Assembly: GCA_002269645.1 (NCBI GenBank)
Contig: NIVC01001075.1
Span: 124,001 to 188,000 of the forward strand
From: Macrostomum lignano
Taxonomy: Eukaryota
Direction of reading: 5' to 3'
DNA: 64,000 nt
Made by a program: the position numbers and the translations under genes. The notes below the pieces were generated by a model. The model made no database searches. It was not told the origin of the DNA and saw only the letters and a program-made list of their open reading frames with translations. Below, in pieces: positions 2,136 to 55,036 of the stretch; within the stretch, counting starts at the first letter, position 1; each line of letters opens with the position of its first letter.

Positions 2136-2605
2136 TCATTTTCCTTTCAACGAGTCCAGAGTCAGGATGGGGTTCTCTGCTGCCTTCAAGTCGAACTCGG
2201 CCCACGCTGGGTCTCCTGTGTCCCTCACCAGGTAGACTTTGACGAAACCATCTCCAACTTCATGGGTGCTCTTTGCCTGGTCAATTCTGGCGCACAGCTT
2301 CGGGATGCTGCACCCATGAGGGATGGCGCCAGGCCGCCTGGTGAACTGCACCATCAGCGACTCCGGCTCCAGCCGCACCGTCAAGTCGCCTTCGGCCACT
2401 TCAGCCGAAGTCCAACGACTTGGCCGGCGAAGAAAGTTCGAATGAAGATCGAACTTCGGCTTGATGCCTTCGATGGTCAGGCAGATGCGGATGGTGTTGG
2501 CTCGCTTCCGGTGCACTTGAACTCGAGACGGACAGGTGTACGGCTCGATGGCGACCGCCGCCGCTGCTGCTTCGGTTGCTGAAGCTGGCGGCTGCAGTGT
2601 GGCTG
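2136..2605 (-). CDS. CS/p23-like (HSP20-like chaperone fold) protein, paralog 1, exon 2
   Basis: Acceptor ttctcag| at 2606, phase 1; open to TGA at 2136; C-terminus DLTVRLEPESLMVQF..PKLCARIDQAKSTHEVGDGFVKVYLVRD..W matches the CS-domain pattern by eye. Confidence 0.7.
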
Positions 2606-2636
2606 CTGAGAACGAATAATAGAAAGTCTTGGTGGA

Positions 2637-2905
2637 GGGGCGATTCTCTGGGAGATTCTCAGTGAGGTGAGGGGCGATTCTCTGGGAGATTCTCAGTGAG
2701 GAGAGGGGCGATTCTCTGGGAGATTCTCAGTGAGGTGAAGGGCGATTCTCTCGGAGATTCTCAGTGAGGTGAGGGGCGATTCTCTGGGAGATTCTCAGTG
2801 AAGGGAGTGGCGATTCTCTGACAGATTCTCAGTGAGGTGAGTGGCGATTCTCTGGGAGATTCTCAGTGAGGTGAGGGCGATTCTTTGGGAGATTTTCAGT
2901 GAAGG
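2637..2905. repeat. ~34-bp minisatellite (intronic)
   Basis: gaggggcgattctctgggagattctcagtgaggt, about 8 copies. Confidence 0.9.
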
Positions 2906-3112
2906 GCCGTTATCTAGGCAATTTTTTGATAGGCAATTCTATGAATTTTTTAATTTAGTGGGATCACCAGAATGGACAGAGGTAACTTATGCATATCCTA
3001 CTTAAAGTAGATGTTCGTAAGAAAGGCGCTTTAAAAAAACTTTTTCGCCTTGAAATTTGTCAGCAGTGAATCGTGATCACATCACTCAGTCTGAAATAAT
3101 CGAATTTCTCAC

Positions 3113-3533
3113 CGCTGGCTGAAGCACCACCGGCAGTAGCTGTAGCTCCTCCAGCTGGTGCTTCCTCGCCTTCGTCTTCTTCAGCATCCGCTTCTGCTGC
3201 CGCCGGATTTATCTGGGCTTCTTCATCTCCTCCTCCATTTTCACTATCGCTCCCCTCATCGTCGCTTTCCTTTTGTTCTTCTTTTGTTGCTGCGGCGTCT
3301 TCCGGCGGCTGTTCTGGCTCCGATTCCTGCCGCGGCAGGCGCGGCTCCGTCTCTTCTAGCTGCGGCTGCTCCATACTTCCGTCTTCCGTGTGTCGTTTGT
3401 TTAAGAAATCGGGCTTAAGAAGTTGGAGGACCGGGAGTCCGGGACCACTGGGGTGAGCGGAGGATCGGAGCTTTAGGCTACAAAGACTCCAAAGACTCCA
3501 AAGACTCCTGTGGTGGAGGGGTGGCTGGGCCAT
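3113..3533 (-). CDS. CS/p23-like paralog 1, exon 1 (acidic low-complexity N-terminus)
   Basis: ORF with E/D/A-rich content; donor AGC G|gtgaga at 3112, phase 1, matches the exon 2 acceptor; start uncertain (ATG 3533 or 3374). Confidence 0.6.
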
Positions 3534-3608
3534 CTTCTTCTCTCTCCTCTTTCCCTTACCCCACCATCCCGATCTGAACCGCATTCCTTCACCCCGTCCC
3601 CAGTTTAT

Positions 3609-3705
3609 GGCCGCCCGTTAGCGGAGCCCATCCCACGCTAAAAATAGCCCGTTAGCGGGGTCCGCCCCACGGTGGGGTGGGCTCCCTTAGCGCGGGCCAG
3701 CCCAC
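3609..3705. mobile_element. ~100-bp GC-rich interspersed repeat with internal inverted repeat, copy 1
   Basis: Near-identical reverse-complement copy at 18030-18126. Confidence 0.7.
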
Positions 3706-3974
3706 AATGGTTAGGATATGCCATTGCGGGGCTGTGGAGAAGCAGACGCCAGAACTTGACTCGCATTGGTTGTCAAGATACATGGCACTAATTCAAAATA
3801 GAAAAAAAACTTTTTTTTCGCTCCATTGAGTGAGAACTAAATGCATTGACCTTGCCAGGGCGCTAAAATTGGCGCCCAAAGGCTGAAATTGGCGCCGGTA
3901 TATTAAACTTGGCGCCCAGAAGTAGCAAGCTGATATATGCTGCCACTTCTACGCTCGTTGGCACATTCCAGCGC

Positions 3975-6230
3975 TAATTTGGGGATCCTGGCGCCGATTT
4001 GGTGATCCTGGCGCCAAATTTGACTTCCGGCGCCAATTTGAGCTTTCCCGCGCCGATTTGCGCTATCCTGCGCCGATTTAAGCTTTCTAGCGCTGGTTTA
4101 GGTTTTCTTGAGCTGATTTCAGCATTCCGGCGCTGATTCAGCGATCCTGGCGCCGATTTGGTGATCCTAGCGCCAAATTTGACTTCCGGCGCCAATTTGA
4201 GCTTTCCCGCGCCGATTTGCGCTATCCTGCGCCGATTTGAGCTTTCTAGCGCTGGTTTAGGTTTTCTTGAGCTGATTTCAGCATTTCGGCGCTGATTCAG
4301 CGATCCTGGCGCCGATTTGATGATCCTGGCGCCGATTCGGCGATCCTGGCGCCAAATTTGACTTTCGGCGCCAATTTGAGCTTTACCGCGCCAAGTTAAG
4401 CTTTCCAGCGCTGGTCCGGGCTTTATGGCGCTGATTTCAGCATTCCAACGCTGATTTGGCGATCCTCGCGCCGATTTAGTGATCCTGGCGCCAAATTTGA
4501 CTTTCGGCGCCAAATTGAGCTTTCCCGCGCCGATTTGAGCTATCCTGCGCCGATTTGAGCTTTCTAGCGCTGATTTGAGCTTTCTAGCGCTGTTTTAGGT
4601 TTGCTTGAGCTGATTTCAGCATTCCGGCGCTGATTCAGCGATCCTGGCGCCGATTTGGTGATCCTGGCGCCAAATTTGACTTCCGGCGCCAATTTGAGCT
4701 TTCCCGCGCCTATTTGAGCTTTCCAGCGCTGGTCCGGGCTTTTTAGCGCTGATTTGGCGATACTGGCGCCGATTTGGTGATCCTGACGCCAAATTTGACT
4801 TCCGGCGCCAATTTGAGCTTTCACGCGCCAGTTTTAGCTATCTTGCGCCGATTTGAGCTTTCCAACGCTGGTCCGGGCTTTTTGGCGCTGTTTTCAGCAT
4901 TCCGGCTCTTATTCAGCGATCCTGGCGCCGATTTGGTGATCCTGGCGCCAAATTTGACTTCCGGCGCCAATTTGAGCTTTCCCGCGCCGATTTGAGCTTT
5001 CCAACGCTGGTCCGGGATTTTTGGCGCTGTTTTCAGCATTCCGGCTCTTATTCAGCGATCCTGGCGCCGATTTGGTGATCCTGGCGCCAAATTTGACTTC
5101 CCGCGCCAATTTGAGCTATCCTGCGCCGATTTGAGCTTTCTAGCGCTGGTCCGGGCTTTTTGGCGCTGATTTTAGCATTCCGGCGCCGATTTGGTGATCC
5201 TGGCGCCAAATTTGACTTTCGGCGCCAATTTGAGCTTTCCCGCGCCTATTTGAGCTATCCTGCGCCGATTTGAGCTTTCTAGCGCTGGTTTAGGTTTTCT
5301 TGAGCTGATTTCAGCATTCCGGCGCTGATTCAGCGATCCTGGGGCCGATTTGATGATCCTGGCGCCGATTCGGCGATCCTGGCGCCAAATTTGACTTTCG
5401 GCGCCAATTTGAGCTTTCACGCGCCAATTTTAGCTATCTTGCGCCGATTTGAGCTTTCCAACGCTGGATCCGGGCTTTTTGGCGCTGTTTTCAGCATTCC
5501 GGCTCTTATTCAGCGATCCTGGCGCCGATTTGGTGATCCTGGCGCCAAATTTGACTTCCAGCGCCAATTTGAGCTATCCTGCGCCGATTTGAGCTTTCTA
5601 GCGCTGGTCCGGGCTTTTTGGCGCTGATTTTAGCATTCCGGCGCTGATTCGGTGATCCTGGCGCCAAATTTGACTTCCGGCGCCAATTTGAGCTATCCTG
5701 CGCCGATTTGAGCTTTCTAGCGCTGGTCCGGGCTTTTTGGCGCTGATTTTAGAATTCCGACGCTGATTCGGTGATCCTGGCGCCGACCGGCGCCAATTTG
5801 AGCTATCCTGCGCCAATTTGAGCTATCCTGCGCCAATTTGAGCTATCCTGCGCCAATTTGAGCTATCCTGCGCCAATTTGAGCTATCCTGCGCCAATTTG
5901 AGCTATCCCGCGCCGATTTGAGCTTTCTAGCGCTGGTTTCAGCTCTCTAGCGCTGGTTTAGGTTTTCTCGAGCGGATTTCAGCATTCCGGCGCTGATTCG
6001 GCGATCCCTGGCGTAGATTTGGTGATCCTGGCGCCAAATTTGACTTCCGGCGCCAATTTGAGCTTTCCCGCGCCGATTTGAGCTTTCCAGCGCCGATTTG
6101 AGCTTTCCAGCGCCGATTTGAGCTTTCCAGCGCCGATTTGAGCTTTCCAGCGCCGATTTGAGCTTTCCAGCGCCGATTTGAGCTTTCCAGCGCCGATTTG
6201 AGCTTTCCAGCGCCGATTTGAGCTTTCCGA
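3975..6230. repeat. GC-rich GGCGCC-containing hierarchical satellite
   Basis: ~20-bp related subunits (gcgccgatttgagctttcca, gcgccaatttgagctatcct, ggcgccaaatttgacttcc) in variable higher-order blocks. Confidence 0.9.
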
Positions 6231-6537
6231 GCGTTTTTGGGCTTTAAGGCATGGCTTCAGGGATCAGCGCAGATTTATATCTATTTGGCACTATAAAAAT
6301 CAAAAGTGTCATTTTCGGACTTGTTATTGTTGATTGTTTTGTTATTGATTATTTTTCAATTAGGTATACTCCATCTAGATCACTGTTTGCTCAGAGTTTA
6401 GAATCTACTAAATATCGTTACTCAGCAACATTGAAAAGTCGCCACTCTATGCGCCAGAGAGTAAGATATTATTAGTGAGTGAGTTAAAATATTATAAATA
6501 AAAGATATGATATAAACTAATCAAGGTAGCTTTAATC

Positions 6538-6736
6538 CAGTGGTTCTCAATCTATGGGTCGCGACCCCCAGTGGGGTTGCGTGACCATTTTCTGGGGGTC
6601 GCAGCACGAAGAAATGTGTGAGTTGTCATACATAATAATGCATTACATGTATATTAATTTTAAAAGGGGTCGCGAACATTAAAAATGATGCAAGTGAATA
6701 AATTGGGGTCGCCTGAAAAAAGGTTGAGAACCGCTG
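6538..6736. mobile_element. hAT-type MITE (199 bp)
   Basis: TIR CAGTGGTTCTCAA...TTGAGAACCGCTG; perfect 8-bp TSD CTTTAATC at 6530-6537 and 6737-6744. Confidence 0.9.
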
Positions 6737-9700
6737 CTTTAATCCGTTCAACCCTCGCACACCGCTCCCCCACTTCATTCCTCAACTCACGTCTGCCGCG
6801 TGGCGTTGCGTCACTCGCAAAGATTGAGAGACTTCACCTGCACTTTCAAAAGTGACGACCACAGACTTCTGTGATGGCGACTTTTCGATGTTGCTGAGAT
6901 TTACGAAGTTATTATAATTGAGTTATGATTTACTTTTACTACTTAATTGTGTAATGCCTTTGTCTTAATCTTTAACCCACTCGATGCACTGTTAGTGATG
7001 AGTTATGTTGCCACACAGAATCGCCCATATCGCTTTTATCGCTTTTTATCACCTTCCTCCAGGCCATTCAGTCATGCTACTCTCGTCCTACCCTATAGGT
7101 AGTCTGTATCTCTACCTATTGTCCTATCTCGCGATCCTCTCCTTTACAGTATATCACTCTTCTGATCTTTCATCACCCTAACCTACAGGAGTAGGGGGGA
7201 GGGGGGAGATAGGGCGCATGAGGGCGGGAATCAGAGTTTTCGCAGACGGAAATCTTCCTAATGAAGTTTATTAAGCCTTTGAATAGGCCTTTAACCCCCC
7301 CCCCCAACTAAAACCGCACCTGCGTGTAATCCCACAAGGTGTAGTATATATAATGTATGAAACAATATTTGATGTTTAATGTTTGAATGTCTAAATGTTT
7401 GAAAGACTGCCAGAAATCATAGAACCTAGAAAAGCTCATTTTTAATCTCAATCCACGATTCTTAATTCCCTTTCCCAGAAGGGCATATGGCACCTTTTGC
7501 GAGAAACTTGAAAGACTGGGTCAGATATCATAATTCATAAGGCAGAGAGGAGCTTATGGCACCTTTTTCTAAATGTTTGAAAGACTGGATCATTTATCAT
7601 AATTCATAAGGCAGAGAGGAGCTTATGGCACCTTTTTCTAAACGTTTGAAAGACTGGATCATCTATCATAATTCATAAGGCAGAGAGGAGCTTGTTATGG
7701 CACCTTTTTCTAAATGTTTGAAAGACTGCCAGCTATCATAGAACCGTGAGAAGCTCATTTTTTAATCTCAATCCCCGATTCCGAATCCCTATCCCTTATT
7801 CCTCGTTTTGGAACCCGAATCCACGATTCCTAATTCCATATCCCTGATTCCTCATGTTGGAATCCGAATCCACAATTTCTAATTCCATATCCCTGATTCC
7901 TCATTTTGGAACCCGAATCCACAATTTCTAATTCCATATCCCTGATTCCTCATGTTGGAATCTGAATCCACGATTCCTAATTCCATATCCCTGATTCCTC
8001 ATGTTGGAATCCGAATCCACGATTCCTAATTCCATATCCCTGATTCCTCATTTTGGAATCCGAATCCACAATTCCTAAATCCCTATCCCTAATTCCTCAT
8101 GTTGGAATCCGAATCCACAATTCCTAAATCCATATCCCTGATTCCTCATGTTGGAATCCGAATCCACGATTCCTAATTCAATATCCCTGATTCCTCATGT
8201 TGGAATCCGAATCCACGATTCTTAATTCCCTTTCCAGAAGGGCATATGGCACCTTTTGCAAGAAACTTGAAAGACTGGGTCAGATATCATAATTCATAAG
8301 GCAGAGAGGAGCTTATGGCACCTTTTTCTAAATGTTTGAAAGACTGCCAGCTATCATAGAACCGTGAGAAGCTCATTTTTTAATCTCAATCCCCGATTCC
8401 GAATCCCTATCCCCGATTCCTCATTTTGGAATCCGAATCCACGATTCTTAATTCCATATCCCTGATTCCTCATGTTGGAATCTGAATCCACGATTCCTAA
8501 TTCCATATCCCTGATTCCTCATGTTGGAATCCGAATCCACGATTCTTAATTCCATATCCCCGATTCCTCATTTTGGAACCCGAATCCACAATTTCTAATT
8601 CCATATCCCCGATTCCTCATTTTGGAATCCGAATCCACGATTCTTAATTCCATATCCCTGATTCCTCAATTTGGAACCCGAATCCACAATTTCTAATTCC
8701 ATATTCCGATTCCTCATTTTGGAATCCGAATCCACGATTTTTAGTTCCCTTTCCCAGAAAAGCATATGTCACCTTTTGCAAGAAACTTGAAAGACTGGGT
8801 CAGATATCATAATTCATAAGGCAGAGAGGAGCTTATGGCACCTTTTTCTAAATGTTTGAAAGACTGGATCATTTATCATAATTCATAAGGCAGAGAGGAG
8901 CTTATGGCACCTTTTTCTAAACGTTTGAAAGACTGGATCATCTATCATAATTCATAAGGCAGAGAGGAGCTTGTTATGGCACCTTTTTCTAAATGTTTGA
9001 AAGACTGCCAGCTATCATAGAACCGTGAGAAGCTCATTTTTTAATCTCAATCCCCGATTCCGAATCCCTATCCCTTATTCCTCGTTTTGGAACCCGAATC
9101 CACGATTCCTAATTCCATATCCCTGATTCCTCATGTTGGAATCCGAATCCACAATTTCTAATTCCATATCCCTGATTCCTCATTTTGGAACCCGAATCCA
9201 CAATTTCTAATTCCATATCCCTGATTCCTCATGTTGGAATCTGAATCCACGATTCCTAATTCCATATCCCTGATTCCTCATGTTGGAATCCGAATCCACG
9301 ATTCCTAATTCCATATCCCTGATTCCTCATTTTGGAATCCGAATCCACAATTCCTAAATCCCTATCCCTAATTCCTCATGTTGGAATCCGAATCCACAAT
9401 TCCTAAATCCATATCCCTGATTCCTCATGTTGGAATCCGAATCCACGATTCCTAATTCAATATCCCTGATTCCTCATGTTGGAATCCGAATCCACGATTC
9501 TTAATTCCCTTTCCAGAAGGGCATATGGCACCTTTTGCAAGAAACTTGAAAGACTGGGTCAGATATCATAATTCATAAGGCAGAGAGGAGCTTATGGCAC
9601 CTTTTTCTAAATGTTTGAAAGACTGGATCATCTATCATAATTCATAAGGCAGAGAGGAGCTTATTATGGCACCTTTTTCTAAATGTTTGAAAGACTGCCA

Positions 9701-10255
9701 GCTATCATAGAACCGTGAGAAGCTCATTTTTTAATCTCAATCCCCGATTCCGAATCCCTATCCCTTATTCCTCGTTTTGGAACCCGAATCCACGATTCCT
9801 AAATCCATATCCCTTATTCCTCGTTTTGGAACCCGAATCCACGATTCCTAATTCCATATCCCTGATTCCTCATGTTGGAATCCGAATCCACGATTCTTAA
9901 TTCCCTTTCCAGAAGGGCATATGGCACCTTTTGCAAGAAACTTAAAAGACTGGATCGTCTATCATAATTCATAAGGCAGAGAGGAGCTTATGGCACCTTT
10001 TTCTAAATGTTTGAAAGACTGCCAGCTATCATAGAACCGTGAGAAGCTCATTTTTTAATCTCAATCCCCGATTCCGAATCCCTATCCCCGATTCCTCATT
10101 TTGGAATCCGAATCCACGATTCTTAATTCCATATCCCTGATTCCTCATGTTGGAATCTGAATCCACGATTCCTAATTCCATATCCCTGATTCCTCATGTT
10201 GGAATCCGAATCCACGATTCTTAATTCCATATCCCCGATTCCTCATTTTGGAACC

Positions 10256-13225
10256 CACGCCTATGCAGAAGCTGAAAAATGGGGAAAGAAAATTCCCAAA
10301 GAAACTGATGCTTTTCCCAGCCCCAATGACCTATGCAGATTTCAAAAACAGTGTCAGACAAATCTAATCGCCTTGTCAAAAATGGTAATATGAATTTTTT
10401 ATATTATATGCAAATTACATGTAATATGATAGGTATTTAAGGCGAAACCCATCGATAATATTAATGTTAATATAAGTTCGTAGTTTTAATATTAATTTTA
10501 ATCATTAAAGGAACGTGCAACTGTATTAGTATTAATATTATAAAATGAGAACCATGCACTTATTATTGCTAATGTCCGTATGGAATAAAGTGTGCATGGA
10601 TATTAAGTACACAAGCTAAATCCTAGAAATCTTTGCAGGCATGAAAATGCTTGACATCAAATATGGCTGGAATTGTAGCTAACAACTGCGCGCAGCAGGC
10701 ATTCTGCATACTGCACATGCCCCAGAGGCCTGCGAAACCGCTGCCACGTCGAACGAAAGTCGCTGTGTGCAGACTCGACTGCCTGCTCACTGAAGGTCCC
10801 AAGGCCTGAGTTGAATCGCTCGCAGAACTCCGGAACATGGTGGAAAAGGGCGTGCATCTTAGGTGTCGGCACCAGCTTCAGTTCAGCGCAGCAGGATTCC
10901 AGCTGGGCAATCTTCTGGCAAAAGTCGCTCATCAGCTGTTGCCCAAAGCATGCTTGGCGAACAGCATCGAATGCCATGAGAGCAGACGCATAGCCCTGGA
11001 GCCTTGATGGCAGGTTGCTCTTGAGCTCTTGAGCTTTAAGCAGCAATCTGACACACGCAGGGCCTTCCAGACACCCGCCGTGGTACTGCTCGCGACAGAT
11101 TCCAGCTGAATGCGCCCACTTGTATGCCTTGTCGTCGCCCCAAGCTGAGTTCAGCTGATCGAGCAGTTTGTTGGTCACACCAAGCATGATGTGCAGCTCT
11201 GGTGGTGGCACGAGGTCCAGCATTGGCGTAGAATCAGCCCCAGGGAGAAGAGGCTGTCTGACACAGCTTGCGTAGTTTCTTGCCAGTCGCTGGCAGCTAC
11301 CAGCAGCCTCGAATGCCGTGGCCATCCGACGAATGGATCCAAGGGTTCTTATGGAACCGGCAACTTGCCACGGCGCCTGCCCCTCACAGTAGAGACAAGG
11401 ATGAGCTGCGGCATGACTTTGAAGGCCACACAGGATGTTGGCTAGCTTGAAGTCGCAAGCGACTGTGAACTTAATCGATGTCAAGTCTAGCTCATCTAGA
11501 AGTGCTCGCACATTTGCATAGTTCTCCTGGACATCCTCAGCAATCGCGATGATAAACAGTTTTTTTACGCCAAAGTTGCTTATTCGCGACTCCCTGCTCA
11601 GCTTCTTAGGTGTGGACTCTGCCTGTGGTTCGGTAGGCAGTACTGGGGCGACACTAAGGCAGATTTTTAGCGAGCCACCACCTCCGTCCATCCCCAGCTT
11701 CAATCTCACATCGAACTCACTAAATCCTCGCTTTGAGCAAATGAAGCTCAGCAGGCCCTGCAGATCGGGGCATATGACGGAACATCTTGTGGTATCAGTA
11801 AAGCTGCCACCTGAGGACTTTTGAGTGAATTTGAGCTGCCGCATCTCAAAAAAACTCTCCGCGATGCTGCCTGCGGCTGCCAGAGCTGCCCGCAGTCCGG
11901 GTTGCACGGCCTTACGACTGCCCTCCGCCTGCCTGATAATTGTGGCTGCCATGTTTGTCTGCCGGTCACTCAGATTGAGAGATGTCTTTAACGTTACTAG
12001 TGTCTCGGTCCTCAGCGCTCTCTGCTCATTTGAATCACTTGCATGCCTCAGCTGCATTGGTGGGCCACCGGTGGCGCTGGAAATAGAAGCCGTTGATCCA
12101 TGTCCTGATGCTGCTGCTGCTCTTAGCTTTTCACGCATCACGTCATGAGCGATGTGCTCTTTTGATGTAGGGCTGAGCGTGCGCAGGTACTGCAACTTGC
12201 TGGAGACGCTGCACTCGTGCCTTAGGCCTTTGCCCACAAGTGAGTGGCACCTAGTGCAGCGCTTCTCCGAGTCTCTGTCCTGGCTTCGAGTTGTTTCTGC
12301 AGGTCGTCCTTGGGGCAATTTATGGTTGGCCCGGCTGCTGTCAGACATGTATGGGTGCCAGACCGCCACCCGCTTGTTTGATGGGCTGGAAACTACCTGG
12401 CAGATACAGCAGGAGCAGTGCGGATGCTCACGTGTGAGTTGTGGCAAAACCTCCAAATCTGCAACAATTTGAAGGTATGGCAGTCGAGCAGGCAGTTCTT
12501 GCGGTACAGGTGACGTCTGTGACTGCAATTTCTTGCTGCAGCAGCTGCACATGCCTCCTGGCAGAGTATTACGGATGTAGGCATGACAGAATTCTGGCAG
12601 GATAAATTGCTCGATGAGTTCTGCCTGAGCAGCTGAAATAACGCGATCGGCTTTGCGGAAGCAGAGGATGCAGCACCAGATACGATTCTCTTCATGTGTG
12701 CGTCGAAAGTTTGGCATCGCGAGGCCAGAGAACTGATTTGAGTACTGAGGGTAATTGTTTCAATTGACTGCAACTTTATTTTCAAAGGAAGTCTGCGTGT
12801 TAGCAAACTTGTGATAAGAGGCATGTTCTACTTTATGAATGTACATAGTCTGTTCATTGTTTCTCAATCCCTTAATCACAATAGATCTCAATAAATATGT
12901 ACATTTGAGTTGTCTGCCAAAATTTCTATCTAATAATGTACAGCATTTTATGACGCCCTTAAATTTATGCTCTAAACTTTGCAATTGATGCCTGCTCTTG
13001 TTACGCAATTGTTTTCACTACTTGCAATGGCGCAACTGACGAATCTAATACTGAACATGCAGCTGAGAACACATAATTTCAATTTTCCATTCTATTATTT
13101 TTGGACAAGGCGATTAGATTTGTCTGACACTGTTTTTAAAATCTGCATAGGTCATTGGGGCTGGGAAAAGCATCAGTTTCTTAGGGAATTTTCTTTCCCC
13201 ATTTTTCAGCTTCTGCATAGGCGTG
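10256..13225 (-). mobile_element. Chapaev-type (CMC) DNA transposon, full length, 2970 bp
   Basis: CAC...GTG termini; ~122-bp TIRs (10256-10377, 13104-13225) with 2 mismatches; 4-bp TSD AACC (10252-10255, 13226-13229); single transposase ORF. Confidence 0.9.
10657..12717 (-). CDS. Chapaev-like DDE transposase (686 aa)
   Basis: N-terminal H-x7-C-x2-C-x33-P-x2-M-C-x2-C (Chapa-like zinc motif); second CxxC..HxC; GMDGGG, ACDFK..PCLYC, PPELH and SEQAVES motifs as putative D,D,E scaffold; uninterrupted ORF inside TIRs. Confidence 0.88.
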   Translation of the reverse strand: MPNFRRTHEENRIWCCILCFRKADRVISAAQAELIEQFILPEFCHAYIRNTLPGGMCSCCSKKLQSQTSPVPQELPARLPYLQIVADLEVLPQLTREHPHCSCCICQVVSSPSNKRVAVWHPYMSDSSRANHKLPQGRPAETTRSQDRDSEKRCTRCHSLVGKGLRHECSVSSKLQYLRTLSPTSKEHIAHDVMREKLRAAAASGHGSTASISSATGGPPMQLRHASDSNEQRALRTETLVTLKTSLNLSDRQTNMAATIIRQAEGSRKAVQPGLRAALAAAGSIAESFFEMRQLKFTQKSSGGSFTDTTRCSVICPDLQGLLSFICSKRGFSEFDVRLKLGMDGGGGSLKICLSVAPVLPTEPQAESTPKKLSRESRISNFGVKKLFIIAIAEDVQENYANVRALLDELDLTSIKFTVACDFKLANILCGLQSHAAAHPCLYCEGQAPWQVAGSIRTLGSIRRMATAFEAAGSCQRLARNYASCVRQPLLPGADSTPMLDLVPPPELHIMLGVTNKLLDQLNSAWGDDKAYKWAHSAGICREQYHGGCLEGPACVRLLLKAQELKSNLPSRLQGYASALMAFDAVRQACFGQQLMSDFCQKIAQLESCCAELKLVPTPKMHALFHHVPEFCERFNSGLGTFSEQAVESAHSDFRSTWQRFRRPLGHVQYAECLLRAVVSYNSSHI

Positions 13226-14149
13226 AACCCGAATCCACAATTTCTAATTCCATATCCCCGATTCCTCATTTTGGAATCCGAATCCACGATTCTTAATTCC
13301 ATATCCCTGATTCCTCAATTTGGAACCCGAATCCACAATTTCTAATTCCATATTCCGATTCCTCATTTTGGAATCCGAATCCACGATTTTTAGTTCCCTT
13401 TCCCAGAAAAGCATATGTCACCTTTTGCAAGAAACTTGAAAGACTGGGTCAGATATCATAATTCATAAGGCAGAGAGGAGCTTATGGCACCTTTTTCTAA
13501 ATGTTTGAAAGACTGCCAGCTATCATAGAACCGTGAGAAGCTCATTTTTTTATCTCAATCCCCGATTCCGAATCTCTATCCCTTATTCCTCGTTTTGGAA
13601 CCCGAATCCACAATTCCTAAATCCATATCCCTGATTCCTCATGTTGGAATCCGAATCCACAATTCCTAAATCCATATCCCTGATTCCTCATGTTGGAATC
13701 TGAATCCACGATTCTTAATTCCATATCCCTGATTCCTCATTTCGGAATCCGAATCCACGATTCTAAATTTATATCCCTGGTTCCTCATGTTGGAATCCAA
13801 ATCCACGATTTCTAATTACTTATCCCTGATAAGATGCACTTGTTTATATCCCTCAGAGGGGAATGGTGAGGGGAAGCTTCTGACGTTCTAGTTTCTTTAG
13901 CTATACAAGTAAATATAGATGTAGTCTTCGCATAAATATTTATGGCACCTTTTATCAAAAGGTTTGAAAGCCTTTAATCGGTTTTTGGTAGAAGAAAATG
14001 ACAAGTCAAAGTGGCTGTCAAACCATAAACTCAAGCCAGACTTGTCCACAAACGTGTCCGCAAAATTCGGCAAAAAGCCTTGGGACTGCGCCTGTATGTG
14101 TATTCTAATATCAAAACACAGCTAATAAAAGCAAAAAAAGAAGCGTCAT

Positions 14150-14800
14150 GTATAAATGAAAGAAGCGTCATGCAAACAATCATAGAAGCGTCATGTAAAC
14201 GATCATAGAAGCGTCATGTCAACAATCATGGAAGCGTCATGTAAAAAAGCATAGAAGCGTCCGGTAAAAATCATACAAGCATAATGTAATAAATCATAGA
14301 AGCGTCCTGTAAACAATCATATAGGCGTCATGTAAAAAAATCATAGAAGCGTCATGTAAAAAATCATAGAAGCGTCATGTAAAAATCATAGAAGCGTCAT
14401 GTAAACAATCATAGAAGCGTCATGTAAAAAATCATAGAAGCGTCATGTAAACAATCATAGAAGCGTCATGTAAAAATCATAGAAGCGTCATGTAAAAATC
14501 ATAGAAGCGTCATGTAAAAATCATAGAAGCGTCATGTAAAAAATCATAGAAGCGTCATGTAAAAATCATAGAAGCATCATGTAAAAAATCATAGAAGCGT
14601 CATGTAAAAAATCATAGAAGCGTCATGTAAAAATCATAGAAGCGTCATGTAAAAATCATAGAAGCGTCATGTAAACAATCATAGAAGCGTCATGTAAAAA
14701 ATCATAGAAGCGTCATGTAAACAATCATATAAGCGTCATGTAAACAATCATAGAAGCGTCATGTAAAAAATCATAAAAGCGTCCGGTAAAAATAACAGAG
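14150..14800. repeat. 23-24-bp minisatellite
   Basis: atcatagaagcgtcatgtaaaaa, about 25 copies. Confidence 0.95.
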
Positions 14801-15304
14801 GCGTCATGTAGAAAAGAAAATGAGCTTTATGTAAAAATGAAAAAAGTAAAAAAATGTAAAAAAATAGAAGCATTACGTAAAAATCAATAAGCATCATGTA
14901 AAAAGAAGCGTCATGTCAAAAAGTAGCGTCATTTCAAAATAAAAAAAGAGTCACGTGAAACTGTGCTGTGACTCTTGAGGAGAATTACTAAGATGTTAAG
15001 GCTCACGGGGAATAACTGAGATGTACTCGTAAATGCTTATGAGGGATTTTTGAGATGTCTAGGTAAAATTCAGAAGCTACATGTAGTTTATTCACTTTTT
15101 TATTACATTCTTTGTTAGTTCCCCACGAGGGGCGCTAATAGAAGAAGCGTCATTTTAAACAGATGAAAGTAGATATAAAAGAAGAGTCATGTCGAAGTTA
15201 GGAGATTCATTTGGGAATCGCTACGATGTCAAGGCTTGGAGGAATTGCTATAATGCTGTAATGTTATAATGACTCTTGGGGAGAATTACTAAAATGGCAA
15301 TGCT

Positions 15305-15328
15305 TTAGGGTTAGGGTTAGGGTTAGGG
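15305..15328 (+). repeat. Interstitial telomeric repeat (TTAGGG)4
   Basis: Four perfect TTAGGG units. Confidence 0.85.
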
Positions 15329-18029
15329 TTGACAGATTTTTTAAGATTTCAAGGCTTATGGGGGTCATCGCTCAGATTTCAAGGGGGGGGGTTTGATATG
15401 TTAAGACTTGTGGGGGGAGGAATTGCTGAGATGTCAACGCTTACAAGCGATTGCTGAGGTTATTGCAAAGAGACACTACAATCTACATGTAGTTTATTAA
15501 AAAAACTCGTACTGCATTTTTTGGCTCCCCAAGGGGGGGCGCTGATTGCTAGTTAAATTCTGAAATTATGAACCACGAAAAGACAGGAGCAGTTGAAACT
15601 GAAAAATAACAAAACTTAGTTCGTATCATATCGGCCATCGGGTGTTTCATAGTCTAAATCTGGGATAAAAGTAATCAAACTGGTTTTAAATAAACATTCA
15701 TCTGCTTCTCATTTTCTATTAATGTTGCTATGGTGACCAAAGTATCCAGGCGATATCCAAGTGCAGGTTTGTGGTGCCCCTATGACATCGCAGCGGCCAG
15801 GCCATAGGCGTTGTACATCCTGGGCTCCAGGTCCGGCTGGACAAAGAATGCCGGCAGCCGAGTGGCCAGGCGGCAATCTCGCCCTCTGCACTCCGGCAAC
15901 GGCAGAGCGCGCTAGAAGCCCTCGTAGCGATCGGGCAGAATCTGGATGAGAGTGCAAAATGTGTTTTTGACTGGTTAGTTTCGTTGCTTCGATACATGTC
16001 GGCTGTTTTGTGATATTAATTTACAGTTTCTAAGGTTGTAACTTGTTTCATCAATGATTTAACGGCCCAGCCTTGCTTGCGTCAAAAACTGTAGAATTTT
16101 AGCAAAGTAAATCAGTATGTCGATTACTAGCCAAGGTAAATTCTAGTACCTAGGAAGAAGTACCTAGGTATCCAGGTAATAAAAGTTCCTAGGGAGCGCT
16201 GGGAGGAGTGGCGCTCCCACCAGACCCCTAAATCCGCGCCCCTGGCTACAGCTGTTGCGAAATATTTTAAAAGTGTCATTTTTAGTCAGTTCAGTATACT
16301 TCAGTATTTCTGTTTTACTGAACTTTTATACTTCGCAATTCAATTTACGAGGGGTGTTAATTCAGAAGTACAATTCAGAAGTACAATTCAGAAGTACAAT
16401 TCAGAATTTACGATACAGTTGTAATCAGATAAGGATTTATGGATTCCGACTGGGGCTATTTGCTTTAGACGAGTCAATTATGGATGGAATGTGCTCATCT
16501 GTTGTGGTAGGATGCAATGACTCACTAGGCGGCGCCGCCAAGCATCAGAACGTGGCCGCCGGCCGGCCATCGTCGCGGAACGCCATCTTAGCGGACAAAA
16601 TCAGCGATGGCCTCGTTCAGCAGGGGAGGTGAACAGCGTCCCGAGTAGCCAAACCACGGCTAGCCAGCCATGAGGTCTGCTGGCAGCGGATTCTGTCACC
16701 TGCGGGTTGATTGCGGCGGATTGCGACTTCAGTGCAACCTGAGCAACTGTAAATTAAAATCACAAAACAGCCGATATGTATCGAAGGGCGATATTTTTTC
16801 AGAAAGGGTATCAGAGTATCGCTTTTAACCGATACTTTTTCTGAGTATCGTGCCCAACACTGGGTAATTATTATCCCTTTTTAATTGTTTCTTTTCTACC
16901 ATTTTTGTTTTATTTTCAAAGTTTTATCTTAAATACGAGCGGGTCCGAAAGATCAGTTTGCTCTAGTGTAAACAGAATTCCAAACAATATTATCGCTTTG
17001 CTTAAAATGCTAACATTCAGTATCTATTTGTACTCCAGCATAAGATCAATTTATTTGACTACTTTACTCTTTATTTGACTTCCTAAACTAGAAAAGGAAA
17101 TAAGATCATACAGCAACCACAATTCAAGTATTTCAGGGCCAATGAAGTGCCAAAGGGGGCGCCAGATTGCCAGAATTTAACGAACGTGAGATTTTGAATA
17201 TCCGCGTGAATTTAAATTTTGTTCAAATTCCTAATTTTTTAACTTTGTGCGGAAATTCAAAATTTATTTTTCCGCCTTTTTTGACAATATTTACAAACGG
17301 ATTCAGTATACGAGTATTCTGAAAATAAAGATAACTGCTAAAGGACAAGTCCAATCTATAGAAATTAGAAAACTGGGACTCAGCGATTCTGCGAATTAGG
17401 AAATTAGCCTGTCTGTCAATTTTAGAATATCTCGCTTAGTACCTTACTTTGCTAAGTTTGTTTTTTTAAATCTTTTACGTTTGAAACGAAATGGATGGCT
17501 AGTCGTCCTCACTTCTTGCGCCTGTACTATTTTTCTTTGACCATATTTCCACCTTTAAGGTTATAGAAGAATATAAGATTCCTAGCATATTGCAATTATA
17601 AGCTAGACATAAAAGAAAATACAATGAGTACAATGCAAATTAAGAACCAACGTTTGCTTACCTTTGGAATAAAGAAATAACGAAGGCCTTACGAGCGTAT
17701 TAAGAATAAATCTCAAGATCTTAAAGATTCAACTGAGTCAAATAGTTTGATAAATGATATGTATTAAAAAGTAGAAACTATACGTTGAATGAAACACGTT
17801 TCTTTAAAGAATACAATTCCTTGCAGCTTAAAACGAAATGCGTTCTAGGAGTTTTTTAATTTTGGGAGAGTTGGGAAAGACAAAGAGCCGTCTTCATCCA
17901 GCATACATTAATATACGAGAAATGAGTCACGGATGTGCAGTGTTTTCAGCTAGCTTCATTGCTAGTACAGTGCTAGTACGCTAGTGCGCACTGGCGTTCC
18001 ACACTCACCCCACCTCTCCCTCTCCGCTC

Positions 18030-18126
18030 GTGGGCTGGCCCCCGCTAAGGGAGCCCATCCCACCGTGGGCTGGGTCCCGTTAACGGGCTATTTTTAGCGT
18101 GGGATGGGCTCCGCTAGCGGCGGGCC
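18030..18126. mobile_element. ~100-bp GC-rich interspersed repeat, copy 2 (inverted relative to 3609-3705)
   Basis: Direct sequence comparison with the reverse complement of copy 1. Confidence 0.7.
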
Positions 18127-18406
18127 GTTAGGTGCCGTCCCCCGCCTGAATGTACAGATACGGGTGCGTAATCTATTTTTAGAATACGCACTCACCACAC
18201 CACCCCTCCCTGGAGGGGCTTTCATATCGGGCCCCCACACTTAGTTCAACTTCTGAAATAAACCCCCCAGGCGCCATGACGTGTACACTGGAATTGGAAC
18301 CCCAATTTGACTAATTACGAGAATTGTTAAGGCTTCTGCTTTTATCGATTTTTCTCTCCTCCCAGTTTATAGTAAAGGAAATGTCGGAATCCAAGGTCAA
18401 CACACA

Positions 18407-18956
18407 GGGACGCTTTCATTAGACCTAAATTTCACAACGCCTAAAACCACCAGTCCACCACACTTCACAACGCCTAAATTTCATATCGCCTAAATTTCAC
18501 AACGCCTAAAATATTTGCACGCTCTTTCACATCGCCTAAATTTCACATCGCCTAAATTTCACAACGCCTAAAATCAAAAGTGCAGCCTCCTTCACATCGC
18601 CTAAATTTCATATCGCCTAAATTTCACAACGCCTAAAACCGAAAATGCAGCATCCTTCACATCGCCTAAATTTCATATCGCCTAAATTTCACAACGCCTA
18701 AAATCTTTGCTTCTCTCCTTCACACTTAGTTTTAGGTGTTGTGAAATTTAGGCGATATGAAGTTTAGGCGATATGAAAGAGCATGCAGATTTTTAGGCGT
18801 TGTGAAATTTAGGCGATATGAAATTTAGGCGATATGAAATTTAGGCGATGTGAAGGAGCGTGCAGAAATTTTAGGCGTTGTGAAATTTAGGCGTTGTGAA
18901 GGAGGCTGCATTTTCGATTTTAGGCGTTGTGAAATTTAGGTCTTTTGAAGCGCCCC
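18407..18956. mobile_element. Foldback MITE, probably Mutator/MULE-like
   Basis: TIR GGG(A/G)CGCTT..AGACCTAAATTTCACAACGCCTAAAA; arms built from 17-bp cgcctaaatttcaca(a/t) repeats in opposite orientation; 9-bp TSD CAACACACA (18398-18406, 18957-18965). Confidence 0.85.
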
Positions 18957-19664
18957 CAACACACACAGCACCCACCCAATAACCACAAATACGATAGTTA
19001 ATCAGTGATGTAATTCTATGAGTAAGCCAATTTCTTTTAATCCTCTTTAATTCTGTGACATTAATAGACCAAAGGAGGCAAGAATTTCATGACAATAAAC
19101 TCCCACCAGACCAAAATATCGTTGTTTGGCCACCTTAAATGCTAATATGTGACCGAGGCCCAAAATTTTGCAAAAACGCTGTTTTGTCAGTGACGAAATC
19201 ACTCGATTTATTTAACGATAGGTTGAGAAATTCCCGAAAGACAGTACAAAGTTAATAAGTATATTAATACACATGCCTTAAGCATTTTTATCGTTTATTT
19301 AAATGCAAAGCCGTATCCGTATGGGTAAAATCGTAGAAACATAAAAGCCAGTGCACCAAAATGCATTGCAAATGCAGCACGTACAAGCATTGGCAGTAAG
19401 TATACGGTACACATAGTCTCGCTTCTTGTAATGCAACAACTTAATTAAGTGGCAAATCTAAGCATAACGGAGGCGAAATACGAAACAAAGAATAAAATAA
19501 TAGACTTATAAATTAAACTTTGAAGCCATTGTAACTTGGCACTTAAAAGCAATATTGATAAAGCTTTGGAACTTTAATTGCAATTGCAGTACAGCACTGT
19601 CACTTTTCTGTCTTTTTCATATGCTTTTTGCCTAAGTGCCTAGGTGCCTAGGCTAGGTGACCTG

Positions 19665-20159
19665 CTATGGCGGCTGCTGCTGTGCCGACTGTGGCTGTGA
19701 CGGTGCTACAAGGTCGTTTACGTTGATACCAGCATCCTCGTGCTCGTCGACAAACTTGCGCCACTCAGCTTGGTCAGCTGGATACAGGTGTACAACCACA
19801 AAGTTGGTGAATATCTCGTGATAGCTTCTAGCTGTGTCGATGTGAATACTCAGTCTCGGACTCGGAATGGTGAACTCGAATTCGGGGTTCTGCTGCTGCG
19901 CCTCTTTAAAGTATCTCAGGCTAAGGCTCTGGACTTCGTTTTTTACGACAAAAACAGCCGGAGTTCCCACTTCGGAGAAGCCCCGGATCAGGCCTCTGGT
20001 CCTCAGGGGAGACAAAATCGAGTGCCTCTTCGGTCTGATGCCAGGCATGCCCAGCGTCAACTTGAGTCCTACCGGTCTGAATCGGCCAAAATATTTGAAT
20101 TTCCATTGAATATCTCTCGAAGAAACCTCGTCTAAACGGACTTCTTCTTGTTGGGCCAT
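19665..20159 (-). CDS. CS/p23-like protein, paralog 2 (164 aa, intronless)
   Basis: Complete ATG-to-TAG ORF, upstream TATA box, collinear similarity to paralog 1 (GIRPK; PRLSIHIDTARSYHEIFTNFVVVHL..EWRKF). Confidence 0.75.
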   Translation of the reverse strand: MAQQEEVRLDEVSSRDIQWKFKYFGRFRPVGLKLTLGMPGIRPKRHSILSPLRTRGLIRGFSEVGTPAVFVVKNEVQSLSLRYFKEAQQQNPEFEFTIPSPRLSIHIDTARSYHEIFTNFVVVHLYPADQAEWRKFVDEHEDAGINVNDLVAPSQPQSAQQQPP

Positions 20160-20264: not shown

Positions 20265-20274
20265 CTTTTATATA
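20265..20274 (-). promoter_or_regulatory. TATA box of CS-like paralog 2
   Basis: TATATAAAAG on the minus strand about 105 bp upstream of the ATG at 20159. Confidence 0.55.
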
Positions 20275-20734
20275 GCCTGACTTCAACTAGAACCCTTCAT
20301 ATGCAATGTATGTACATTGTGCAGATGGGAGCTTACTTAGTACAAAAGCGCTTGAGGGGTTTTGGTTTTGGGGTGTGCCGAGAGTTTCATCGATTTTTCT
20401 AACCCCCACCATACCCTCTCTATTGTTAACCAAACCGAACGCCGCCGCCTGGGGATGGGTGGCCGAGGGGTCTGATCCCCCACTGACTAATTCTCCACTA
20501 TGCCGAATGCAGTCCAGTAGCCAGTTCAGATGGGACCGTGAGGGATCATTGTGTTGTGACTCAGTGACTCCCACATAAACCCGAACACTTCTGTTCTGAA
20601 ATAGTGGGCCAGAATGAGGTTGGGCCGCTTCACAGGACAGGAAATTCACATCCTAAACAAAACATATCTGCAAAATATGCCAAAATCTAATCTGAAGTTT
20701 TTGGATTCAGCCTCAGTCTGACCTACTAGATCTA

Positions 20735-21358
20735 ATCTGGCGCTTATTCAATCCAATCTGGAGCTTGTTAGATCCAATCTGGCGCTTATTAGATCCAATG
20801 TGGCGCTTATTAGATCCAATGTGGCGCTTATTAGATCCAATGTGGCGCTTATTAGATCCAATCTGGCGCTTATTAGATCAAATGCGGCGCTGTTTAGATC
20901 CAATCTGGCGCTTATGAGATCCAATCTGGATCTGGCGTCAGTTAGATCAAATCTGGCGCTTATTAGATCCAATCTGGCGCTTATTAGATCCAATGTGGCG
21001 CTTATTAGATCCAATGTGGCGCTTATTAGATCCAATCTGGCGCTTATTAGATCCAATGTGGCGCTTATTAGATCCAATCTGGCGCTTATGAGATCCAATC
21101 TGGATCTGGCGTCAGTTAGATCAAATCTGGCGCTTATTAGATCCAATCTGGCGCTTATTAGATCCAATCTGGCGCTTATTAGATCCAATGTGGCGCTTAT
21201 TAGATCCAATGTGGCGCTTATTAGATCCAATGTGGCGCTTATTAGATCCAATCTGGCGCTTATGAGATCCAATCTGGCGATTATTAGATCCAATTTGGCG
21301 CTTATTAGATCCAATTTGGCGCTTATTAGATCCAATCTGGCACTTATTACATCCAATC
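20735..21358. repeat. 21-bp minisatellite
   Basis: ggcgcttattagatccaat(c/g)t, about 28 copies. Confidence 0.95.
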
Positions 21359-29830: not shown

Positions 29831-30315
29831 TGCATCTGCCACTCCAACTCAAAGACTTATTGCGGAGGCTAACTACGCTCGTAACTGATTCACGCTGTGT
29901 ACCCTCTCTGAGCTAGCTTAAAGCCTACCTGCTCTTAAATTTCGCCAGCCAATGACGTAAATCTTTGTCACTATTGGCTAGCTATACTATGGCTAATGCA
30001 AAGTTCGATGACTACTAACAGTAGCTTTGAAGCAGTTAGGGTATTGAAATGATTAATTATCAAGAGAGTTCAAATCGACGCAGAAGAGAAAATAGGAGTC
30101 TTAAACCCGAACTATTGGCTGTAAAATTAATCTCTAGAAAAATAATTGCATTGTTAGCGTATGCTAATGAGGATAAACTGGACTGCGACAGGCGAGGATT
30201 AGCACACCACAAGACTACATACATCATGCAAGCAAGCTCATACGGTCCTAACTTCTACGAAATTAAATGAATGCTAATGGTTTGAAAACAAAATAGCATC
30301 CGAAAAAAACCGCAC

Positions 30316-53134: not shown

Positions 53135-53359
53135 CTGGAAGAGTTCGGCGAGAGGAGGAGTAAAACATGATGGATTCCTGGCCAGACTCAGTACGACAAT
53201 GTCCGCACAGTTTGCTTAGCATACAGATGGAGCCTTATCAGCTAAGTGGATCTCGCAGCCTAGGCTCAGACTGCTCAATAAGTTCAGACAGTTGTTTTTT
53301 CCACCTCTGACCAGCTCGGGCTAAAAGTGCATTCTGTCTGAGCTGGCTCTTAATGTCTC

Positions 53360-54715: not shown

Positions 54716-55036
54716 CCTGTTCTGCCCCCACAGCGCACCTCCCAGACTCGTGAAACACAAACAGGTCATAAATTTTCGAGAATGGAGTTTTCTCTCATTC
54801 AAATCTTTCCGCTTCCGCGACAAGGAAACTCAAACCCGCTCCGACGCAGCTGACAGATGAGACTCATATCCGTGCGCGCGTTTTATTTGACTTGTTTAAA
54901 TCAGCAAATTGATGAAGAAGTTAATTAAATGTAGCAATTCCTTTCGCGAAGTCCCAACACGTTTCTAAGAATCTGTCTGGCTGGCATATAAAAATAGAAT
55001 GCACTTTTAGAACGCGGGATTTTAGCCTAAACGATA

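What the first reader, a model, noticed from the sequence alone, without database searches (positions are those of the whole stretch)
2136..20159. Pair of divergent small CS/p23-fold genes sharing an unusual insertion: possible undescribed co-chaperone family
Seen: a two-exon gene (2136-3533) and an intronless TATA-containing gene (19665-20159), same strand, 17 kb apart, align collinearly by eye: IRICLTIEGIKPK~LKLTLGMPGIRPK; LTVRLEPESLMVQF~FVVKNEVQSLSLRYF; PKLCARIDQAKSTHEVGDGFVKVYL..AWAEF~PRLSIHIDTARSYHEIFTNFVVVHL..EWRKF. Known: the L..I....S......V.V.L.K...W pattern is the C-terminal half of CS/p23 (HSP20-like) domains found in SGT1, NudC and p23. Both proteins carry a ~20-aa insertion after a GI[KR]PK motif and lack the TPR, SGS or CHORD partner domains. 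Inference: an old, lineage-specific stand-alone CS family.
Basis: partly seen in the sequence, partly recalled or inferred. Interest (0 to 1): 0.7.

Follow-up and report, generated by a model that had tools for sequence, protein, structure and literature searches.

The report
Flatworm gene pair, probable divergent CS domains
Two neighbouring Macrostomum lignano genes are real, distantly related duplicates found in no other organism searched; their all-beta core weakly but consistently resembles the CS/p23 co-chaperone domain, and neither the fold nor any function is established.

Summary
Gene 2 (19665-20159, minus strand, 164 aa, no intron) and gene 1 (two exons, minus strand) align collinearly at about 29-33% identity. 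The Smith-Waterman score is 61 against 27.7±4.6 for shuffles (0 of 2000).

Three details change:
- The intron is 3112..2606, so the exons end at 3113 and start at 2605.
- The conserved start of gene 1 is the ATG at 3374 (243 aa), not 3533.
- The 17-kb spacing comes from a 14.5-kb transposon-like insertion (3602-18134). In the second genomic copy, gene 1's ATG lies 1.19 kb downstream of gene 2's stop.

The window is M. lignano contig NIVC01001075.1.

The CS/p23 reading is partly supported:
- Neither native protein hits Pfam, PDB sequences, or 1.84 billion representative proteins.
- With the 22 residues after GIKPK removed, gene 1 hits CS (PF04969) as the top Pfam family (E=0.0025, 19.2 bits, cut-off 21.3).
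- Native gene 1 scores P=2.3e-5 against a CS profile built here. Gene 2 scores only P≈0.005.
- AlphaFold models are all-beta but low-confidence (pLDDT about 50), and Foldseek finds nothing.

A co-chaperone role is untested. This is probably a divergent, lineage-restricted CS-like pair, of modest interest.

The parts
19665..20159 (-). Gene 2: intronless CDS, 164 aa (stop included). It is annotated in GenBank as a hypothetical protein. The paralogous copy is BOX15_Mlig033549g1, 98% identical.
   Evidence: ORF. Exact protein in NCBI on contig NIVC01001075.1. 98% copy P0001. The GenBank annotation is RNA-seq derived (PMC5730564).
19752..20069 (-). Gene 2 all-beta core, residues 31-136 (GLKLTLGM...EWRKF), homologous to the gene 1 core.
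   Evidence: Alignments A1/A5. AF2 strands 31-127. Weak CS-HMM match for residues 104-140, P≈0.005.
19959..20027 (-). Gene 2 shared insert after GIRPK (RHSILSPLRTRGLIRGFSEVGTP, 23 aa, basic).
   Evidence: Aligned with the gene 1 insert; L, R, R and S are conserved. Coordinates.
20269..20274 (-). TATA-like box (TATATAAAAG), 115 nt upstream of the gene 2 ATG.
   Evidence: Consensus match only.
19573..19578 (-). ATTAAA poly(A)-signal-like hexamer, 86 nt downstream of the gene 2 stop.
   Evidence: Consensus match only.
3113..3374 (-). Gene 1 exon 1 coding part: 87-aa acidic, low-complexity N-terminal tail (28 D/E, 4 K/R). The conserved start is ATG 3374-3372.
   Evidence: Frame kept in L001 only from this ATG; downstream indels are 9 and 6 bp, the upstream indel is 20 bp.
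3375..3533 (-). It is probably 5' UTR and contains a 9-bp repeat at 3481-3508.
   Evidence: A 20-bp indel in L001 breaks the frame. In L001 the ORF starts at MEQPQ.
2606..3112 (-). Gene 1 intron (GT...AG, phase 1), 507 bp. It contains a 34-bp tandem repeat at 2635-2902, 7.9 copies. The L001 intron is 671 bp.
   Evidence: Splice signals are identical in both copies. There is no transcript evidence.
2136..2605 (-). Gene 1 exon 2 (stop included): Ala-rich linker plus the beta-rich domain. There is no in-frame ATG before the domain, so an upstream exon is needed.
   Evidence: 99.2% identical to the L001 copy against 97.4% for the flanks.
2193..2495 (-). Gene 1 CS-like core, residues 125-225 of the 243-aa protein (TIRICLT...WAEF).
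   Evidence: CS HMM on the native sequence: 10.1-10.9 bits, P=2.3e-5. Pfam CS 19.2 bits after removing the insert. Top of 322 six-frame segments of the window. AF2 strands are in CS order.
2388..2453 (-). Gene 1 shared insert after GIKPK (FDLHSNFLRRPSRWTSAEVAEG, 22 aa). If the domain is CS, the insert sits between strands beta2 and beta3.
   Evidence: Removing it turns no Pfam hit into CS covering model positions 13-76 of 78.
3602..18134 (.). 14,533-bp transposon-like insertion separating the two genes in this copy only. The 8-bp target-site duplication (GGGGACGG on the minus strand) is at 3594-3601 and 18135-18142. Terminal inverted repeats are at 3609-3705 and 18030-18126.
   Evidence: Absent from L001, where the site is single. 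Inverted repeat I2: 97 nt, 90% complementary.

Best explanation
These are two tandemly duplicated protein-coding genes found only in Macrostomum among everything searched.

Structure proposed:
- Each encodes a small protein with no recognised Pfam domain. The N-termini read by eye do not look like signal peptides (not tested), so an intracellular location is assumed.
- Each is built around a roughly 100-residue all-beta core. That core is most likely a highly diverged CS domain (the p23/SGT1/NudC type, in the HSP20-like beta-sandwich clan).
- Both carry a shared 22-23-residue basic loop inserted between strands beta2 and beta3.
- Gene 1 adds an 87-residue acidic disordered N-terminal tail. Gene 2 adds a short acidic, Gln-rich C-terminal tail.

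Mechanism (inferred, not shown): like other stand-alone CS proteins, the sandwich would be a protein-protein interaction surface, binding either Hsp90 or a client or adaptor protein. The acidic tail would act as a p23-like solubilising or holdase extension. The lineage-specific loop would give partner specificity.

Shown: paralogy, intact conserved reading frames in two genomic copies, restriction to M. lignano in the databases searched, and sub-threshold but CS-specific sequence similarity.

Inferred: the fold and the function.
For: Paralogy and coding constraint:
- Collinear alignment at 29-33% identity; Smith-Waterman z≈7, 0 of 2000 shuffles.
- Both genes are intact in a second locus, L001. 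CDS substitution rates are 0.85-1.4% against 2.6-2.8% in the flanks (p=0.03 and 0.09).
- Only in-frame indels occur downstream of ATG 3374, and the splice signals are identical.
- Both copies of gene 2 appear in an RNA-seq-derived GenBank annotation.

CS-likeness:
- Among 24,736 Pfam models, CS is the top hit for insert-deleted gene 1 (E=0.0025, 19.2 bits, model positions 13-76 of 78). HSP20, from the same clan, is second.
- CS stays top for three other deletion boundaries.
- Unedited gene 1 scores 10.7-10.9 bits, P=2.3e-5, against a CS HMM built from database sequences, with 0 of 1000 shuffles reaching it.
- Gene 2 scores 2.6-3.4 bits, P 0.005-0.007, with 1-2 of 1000 shuffles, in the register that the gene 1/gene 2 alignment predicts.
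- Gene 1 exon 2 ranks first of 322 six-frame segments of the window.
- hhalign places the pair on CS over 76 columns.
- AF2 predicts 8-9 beta strands. In gene 1 they coincide with the strand blocks of the CS-HMM alignment.
Against: - No formal threshold is met. Native sequences give no Pfam hit at E<=10.
- The best edited construct stays under the CS gathering score.
- Gene 2 never hits Pfam and ranks only 5th of 322 window segments.
- hhalign gives P=0.03-0.14 and probability below 2%.
- PDB sequence searches are empty.
- AF2 confidence is low (pLDDT 50.9 and 48.8). Foldseek finds no beta-sandwich match (best E 0.065 and 0.12, TM about 0.2).
- The insert was removed with the CS hypothesis in mind.
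- Gene 1 has no transcript evidence and is not annotated.
- Nothing bears on Hsp90 or client binding.
Confidence: 0.5

Rival explanations
1. The pair is a lineage-specific orphan: real paralogous beta-rich proteins with no common ancestry with CS domains. On this view the I-D-x-x-x-S...L...W..F pattern is a chance or convergent resemblance typical of amphipathic beta strands.
For: - No homologue among 1.84 billion representatives, in Pfam, or in PDB sequences.
- All CS scores are below threshold.
- Gene 2 alone cannot be told from noise.
- Foldseek finds no CS or sHSP match of any weight.
Against: - An unbiased scan of all Pfam families returns CS first and HSP20 second for gene 1, rather than any of thousands of other beta-rich families.
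- Native gene 1 reaches P=2.3e-5 without editing.
- Both paralogues match in the same register.
Confidence: 0.3
2. The core is a small-heat-shock-protein-type alpha-crystallin domain (HSP20 family) rather than a CS domain. It would then act as an oligomeric holdase.
For: - Pfam HSP20 is the second hit for insert-deleted gene 1 (E=0.034, model positions 4-38).
- 'LTIEGIKPK' resembles the 'vdlPGvkkedi' strand of sHSPs (my own knowledge).
- An sHSP structure appears at rank 7 in Foldseek, but without significance.
Against: - The HSP20 match covers only the N-terminal third and is absent with the other deletion boundaries.
- A small HSP20 HMM gives no signal on the native proteins.
- The C-terminal W..F/L signature is CS-like.
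- The two families belong to the same clan, so this rival differs in subfamily and mechanism, not in fold.
Confidence: 0.1
3. One or both reading frames are not functional genes: gene 1 in particular is an unannotated pseudogene or a chance ORF beside a transposon.
For: - Gene 1 is absent from the GenBank annotation, and its exact product is not in the protein collection.
- No canonical poly(A) hexamer lies within 335 nt of its stop.
- In this copy a 14.5-kb transposon sits 228 bp upstream of its ATG.
Against: - Protein-level similarity between the two genes at 29-33% identity can only persist under long coding selection on both.
- Gene 1 is intact, with identical splice sites and only in-frame indels, in two loci.
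- The annotation pipeline removed transcripts overlapping repeats, and gene 1's intron holds a tandem repeat.
- Both copies of gene 2 are annotated from RNA-seq.
Confidence: 0.1

Closest known systems
CS domain family (Pfam PF04969; p23/PTGES3, SGT1, NudC and NudCD proteins)
   Same: - Core of about 100 residues, predicted all-beta.
- Same order of strand-like blocks.
- The C-terminal signature I-[DP]-x-x-x-S-x-x-x-[VI]...L-x-[KR]...W-x-x-[LF] is aligned by HMMER and hhalign.
- Stand-alone architecture with an acidic disordered tail, as in p23 and NudCD2 (my own knowledge).
   Different: - Below the Pfam gathering score.
- A 22-23-residue basic insert between beta2 and beta3.
- The N-terminal W-x-Q strand is not recognisable in gene 1.
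- The acidic tail is N-terminal in gene 1, whereas it is C-terminal in p23.
- No closer to p23, NudC or SGT1 individually than to the mixed profile, so it is not an orthologue of any of them.
HSP20 / alpha-crystallin domain (Pfam PF00011)
   Same: - Same clan and same beta-sandwich architecture.
- Second-best Pfam family for insert-deleted gene 1 (E=0.034).
   Different: - Only the first third of the model matches.
- No signal on the native sequences.
- No sHSP-type C-terminal IxI motif was seen on reading the sequences.
Lineage-specific ('flatworm-specific') genes of Macrostomum lignano
   Same: - No homologue outside the species in the databases searched.
- Present in duplicated genome blocks, as is typical of this hidden-polyploid genome (PMC5730564).
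   Different: Most such genes have no family assignment at all. This pair has a weak but specific CS signal.

Membership tests
CS domain (PF04969) | Score at or above the Pfam gathering threshold (21.3 bits) | tested here: not met
   Native gene 1 and gene 2 give no hit at E<=10. Gene 1 with the insert removed scores 19.2 bits, E=0.0025; other boundaries give 12.7-14.2 bits. Gene 2 variants give no hit.
CS domain (PF04969) | C-terminal half signature (L..I....S...v....i.i.L.K.....W..L) in the right order and spacing | tested here: met
   HMMER and hhalign align gene 1 residues KLCARIDQAKSTHEVGDGFVKVYL...W..F and gene 2 residues RLSIHIDTARSYHEIFTNFVVVHL...W..F to this part of CS profiles.
CS domain (PF04969) | Seven-stranded antiparallel beta-sandwich fold | tested here: inconclusive
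   AF2 predicts all-beta with 8-9 strands, but at pLDDT 50.9 and 48.8. Foldseek against PDB gives no hit at E<=0.001 and TM about 0.2.
CS domain (PF04969) | Statistically significant similarity to a CS profile on unedited sequence | tested here: inconclusive
   Gene 1: P=2.3e-5 for a single pre-chosen family, which would be about 0.6 if corrected for all Pfam families; 0 of 1000 shuffles. Gene 2: P=0.005-0.007. hhalign P=0.03-0.14.
p23 / Hsp90 co-chaperones | Binding to Hsp90 (or a CS-type partner) and chaperone-cycle modulation | not testable with these tools
   No experimental or co-occurrence evidence is available.
p23 / SGT1 / NudC orthologue groups | One-to-one orthology with a named CS protein | tested here: not met
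   No hit to any such protein in the word-index or HMMER searches. Subfamily HMMs score no better than the mixed CS HMM.
HSP20 / alpha-crystallin (PF00011) | Score at or above the Pfam gathering threshold (20.8 bits) across the domain | tested here: not met
   14.7 bits, model positions 4-38 only, in one edited construct. Nothing on the native sequences.
Paralogous gene pair (tandem duplicates) | Significant collinear protein similarity, same strand, adjacent in the ancestral arrangement | tested here: met
   Gene 1's ATG lies 1.19 kb downstream of gene 2's stop in L001.

The most novel reading that the evidence does not exclude
The pair founds a macrostomid-specific subfamily of stand-alone CS proteins. 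Its conserved basic beta2-beta3 loop and acidic tails would recruit lineage-specific clients to Hsp90, making it a new co-chaperone type that arose and diverged rapidly within free-living flatworms.
Probability: 0.12. Interest if true: 0.45.

Novelty: new variant of a known kind. Interest (0 to 1): 0.3.

Why it matters
If the CS assignment holds, the pair would show how far a CS sandwich can diverge while still carrying a loop insertion. It would also give M. lignano, a transgenic regeneration model, a lineage-specific candidate Hsp90-network component that RNAi could test.

If the assignment does not hold, these are two more of the many orphan genes in this genome.

In both cases the corrected gene-1 model (start at 3374, junction 3113/2605) describes a gene that is missing from the public annotation. 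The transposon insertion explains the odd spacing and may affect gene 1's promoter in this copy.

Tried and rejected
- Word-index homology searches with gene 2 and with gene 1 exon 2 returned only the species' own 98% copy, or nothing.
- A HMMER profile of the pair against 1.84 billion representatives found only P0001 and one spurious repetitive protein at E=1e-3.
- Pfam on the native proteins and on C-terminal fragments found nothing.
- PDB sequence searches with the profiles and with edited gene 1 found nothing relevant.
- Two AF2 runs with the only available three-sequence alignments gave low-confidence models. Their Foldseek hits (GyrB ATPase, coronavirus spike NTD, LG domains; TM about 0.2) were rejected as meaningless.
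- Subfamily HMMs (p23 only, NudC only, SGT1 only) and a two-sequence HSP20 HMM gave no better or no signal.
- A 300-replicate hhalign shuffle control timed out.
- Searches for the locus tag in papers and supplements found nothing, so no expression or cell-type data were obtained.
- The idea that the genes are transposon cargo was rejected, because the pair exists without the insertion in L001.
Full report
**Source of the window.** Gene 2's product is 98% identical to hypothetical protein BOX15_Mlig033549g1 of Macrostomum lignano (P0001). The exact window protein is also in NCBI, on contig NIVC01001075.1 of assembly GCA_002269645.1. The window is therefore M. lignano. A second, paralogous copy of the locus was fetched as L001 (NIVC01001255.1).

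**Gene 2.**
- It occupies 19665-20159 on the minus strand as a single 164-codon ORF. Both genomic copies are annotated as a single-exon CDS.
- A TATATAA box lies 115 nt upstream of the ATG, and an ATTAAA hexamer lies 86 nt past the stop.
- The GenBank annotation of this assembly derives from a genome-guided RNA-seq transcriptome, from which transcripts overlapping repeats were removed (PMC5730564). Gene 2 therefore has indirect transcript support.

**Gene 1.**
- The domain-bearing exon (2605..2136, minus strand) has no in-frame ATG ahead of the domain, so it needs an upstream exon.
- A canonical phase-1 GT-AG intron (3112..2606) joins it in frame to the acidic ORF upstream.
- Compared with L001, a 20-bp indel between ATG 3533 and ATG 3374 breaks the longer frame. 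Downstream of 3374 the only indels are 9 and 6 bp. The donor and acceptor are identical, and the L001 product is an intact 238-aa protein.
- The conserved CDS is therefore 3374..3113 + 2605..2136, giving 243 aa. It has an 87-residue acidic tail (28 D/E against 4 K/R), an Ala-rich linker, and the beta-rich domain.
- Gene 1 is not in the public annotation. That may be because its intron carries a 34-bp tandem repeat and repeat-overlapping transcripts were filtered out. This is an inference.

**The two genes are homologous.**
- BLASTP finds the C-terminal block, 12/25 identical, E=1e-5.
- Each protein finds the other gene as its best non-self tblastn hit in the window.
- The Smith-Waterman score of 61 lies about 7 SD above 2000 shuffles, and none reached it.
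- Similarity of this kind at about 30% identity implies long-term coding selection on both genes.
- Between the two genomic copies, the CDSs differ less than the flanks: 0.85% against 2.6% (p=0.03) for gene 1 exon 2, and 1.4% against 2.8% (p=0.09) for gene 2.

**The 17-kb spacing is secondary.**
- Window 3602-18134 (14,533 bp) is missing from L001.
- It is flanked by an 8-bp duplication of a site that is single in L001.
- It ends in 97-nt inverted repeats.
- It carries satellites and a nested element with 127-nt inverted repeats around a 686-aa ORF.
- Without it, gene 2's stop and gene 1's ATG are 1.19 kb apart, so the genes are tandem duplicates. In this copy the insertion lies 228 bp upstream of gene 1's start codon.

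**Relatives elsewhere.** None were found:
- word-index searches;
- a HMMER profile of the pair against 1.84 billion representative proteins;
- PDB sequences;
- Pfam on the native proteins at E<=10.

The databases do not include the many Macrostomum transcriptomes. 'Restricted to M. lignano' therefore means 'not found in any annotated genome, including other flatworms'.

**Testing the CS/p23 idea.**
- *CS profile built here.* I built it from database sequences (p23, NudC, SGT1-like) seeded by three CS domains that Pfam confirmed. Unedited gene 1 scores 10.7-10.9 bits (P=2.3e-5, 0 of 1000 shuffles) over strands beta3-beta7. Gene 2 scores 2.6-3.4 bits (P 0.005-0.007), in the register that the gene 1/gene 2 alignment predicts.
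- *Rank within the window.* Gene 1 exon 2 is the best of 322 six-frame segments of the window, and gene 2 is fifth.
- *Insert removal.* Taking out the 22 residues after GIKPK turns 'no Pfam hit' into CS as the top of 24,736 families (E=0.0025, 19.2 bits against a cut-off of 21.3, model positions 13-76 of 78). HSP20, from the same clan, is second. Three other deletion boundaries keep CS on top at E 0.09-0.27. Gene 2 constructs never hit.
- *Profile-profile comparison.* It aligns the pair to CS over up to 76 columns, but only at P=0.03-0.14.
- *HSP20.* A small HSP20 HMM gives nothing.
- *Structure prediction.* With only three sequences per alignment, AF2 gives all-beta models with strands where the CS alignment expects them, but at pLDDT 50.9 and 48.8. 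Foldseek finds nothing usable.

**Verdict on the fold.** It remains below formal thresholds and rests mainly on gene 1. I put about 0.5-0.6 on a true CS/HSP20-clan sandwich and about 0.3 on an unrelated orphan beta protein.

**Function.** Nothing here tests it. By analogy with stand-alone CS proteins (p23, NudCD2; my own knowledge), the most likely role is a protein-interaction or co-chaperone-type module. The acidic tails and the basic loop would modulate partner choice. This is inference only.

**Novelty and interest.** This is a divergent, lineage-restricted variant of a very common domain, in a genome rich in orphan genes. It is useful for annotation: a new gene model and a transposon insertion. 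It would not surprise a specialist unless a function emerges.

Noticed in passing
window 3602-18134 (target-site duplications at 3594-3601 and 18135-18142): A 14.5-kb DNA-transposon-like insertion with an 8-bp target-site duplication and about 97-nt terminal inverted repeats. It is absent from the paralogous locus L001. It sits 228 bp upstream of gene 1's ATG and is filled with satellite arrays.
   Followed up: yes
window 10256-13225: A nested element with 127-nt inverted repeats (98% complementary) flanking a 686-aa Cys-rich ORF (10657..12717, minus strand). The ORF has no Pfam match and may be an uncharacterised transposase.
   Followed up: partly
window 30263-38953 (minus strand): An uninterrupted 2896-codon ORF, 23% Glu, whose first 1500 or so residues are tandem 14-aa repeats (HEEPAHAEEKVTEV). 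It has no Pfam hit. It lies next to an annotated 1919-aa ankyrin-repeat gene that ends near window 26924, and may be a giant exon of that gene or a separate gene.
   Followed up: partly
window 2635-2902; L001 about 12100-12576: The 34-bp tandem repeat inside gene 1's intron varies in copy number between the two genomic copies (intron 507 bp against 671 bp).
   Followed up: yes
window 15305-15330: An interstitial TTAGGG telomere-type repeat, 4.3 copies, inside the transposon-like insertion.
   Followed up: no
window 20727-21358: A 21-bp tandem array (29.5 copies) starting about 570 bp upstream of gene 2's ATG. It is also present at the paralogous locus.
   Followed up: no
window 53238-54853: A stretch of about 1.5 kb open in five reading frames. 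It is a CT-rich satellite (unit about 17 bp, CTCTCCGTCTCTCCCCT-like), not coding sequence.
   Followed up: partly
window 3990-6229: A 20-bp satellite of about 112 copies with higher-order periods of 139, 159 and 179 bp, at the edge of the transposon-like insertion.
   Followed up: no
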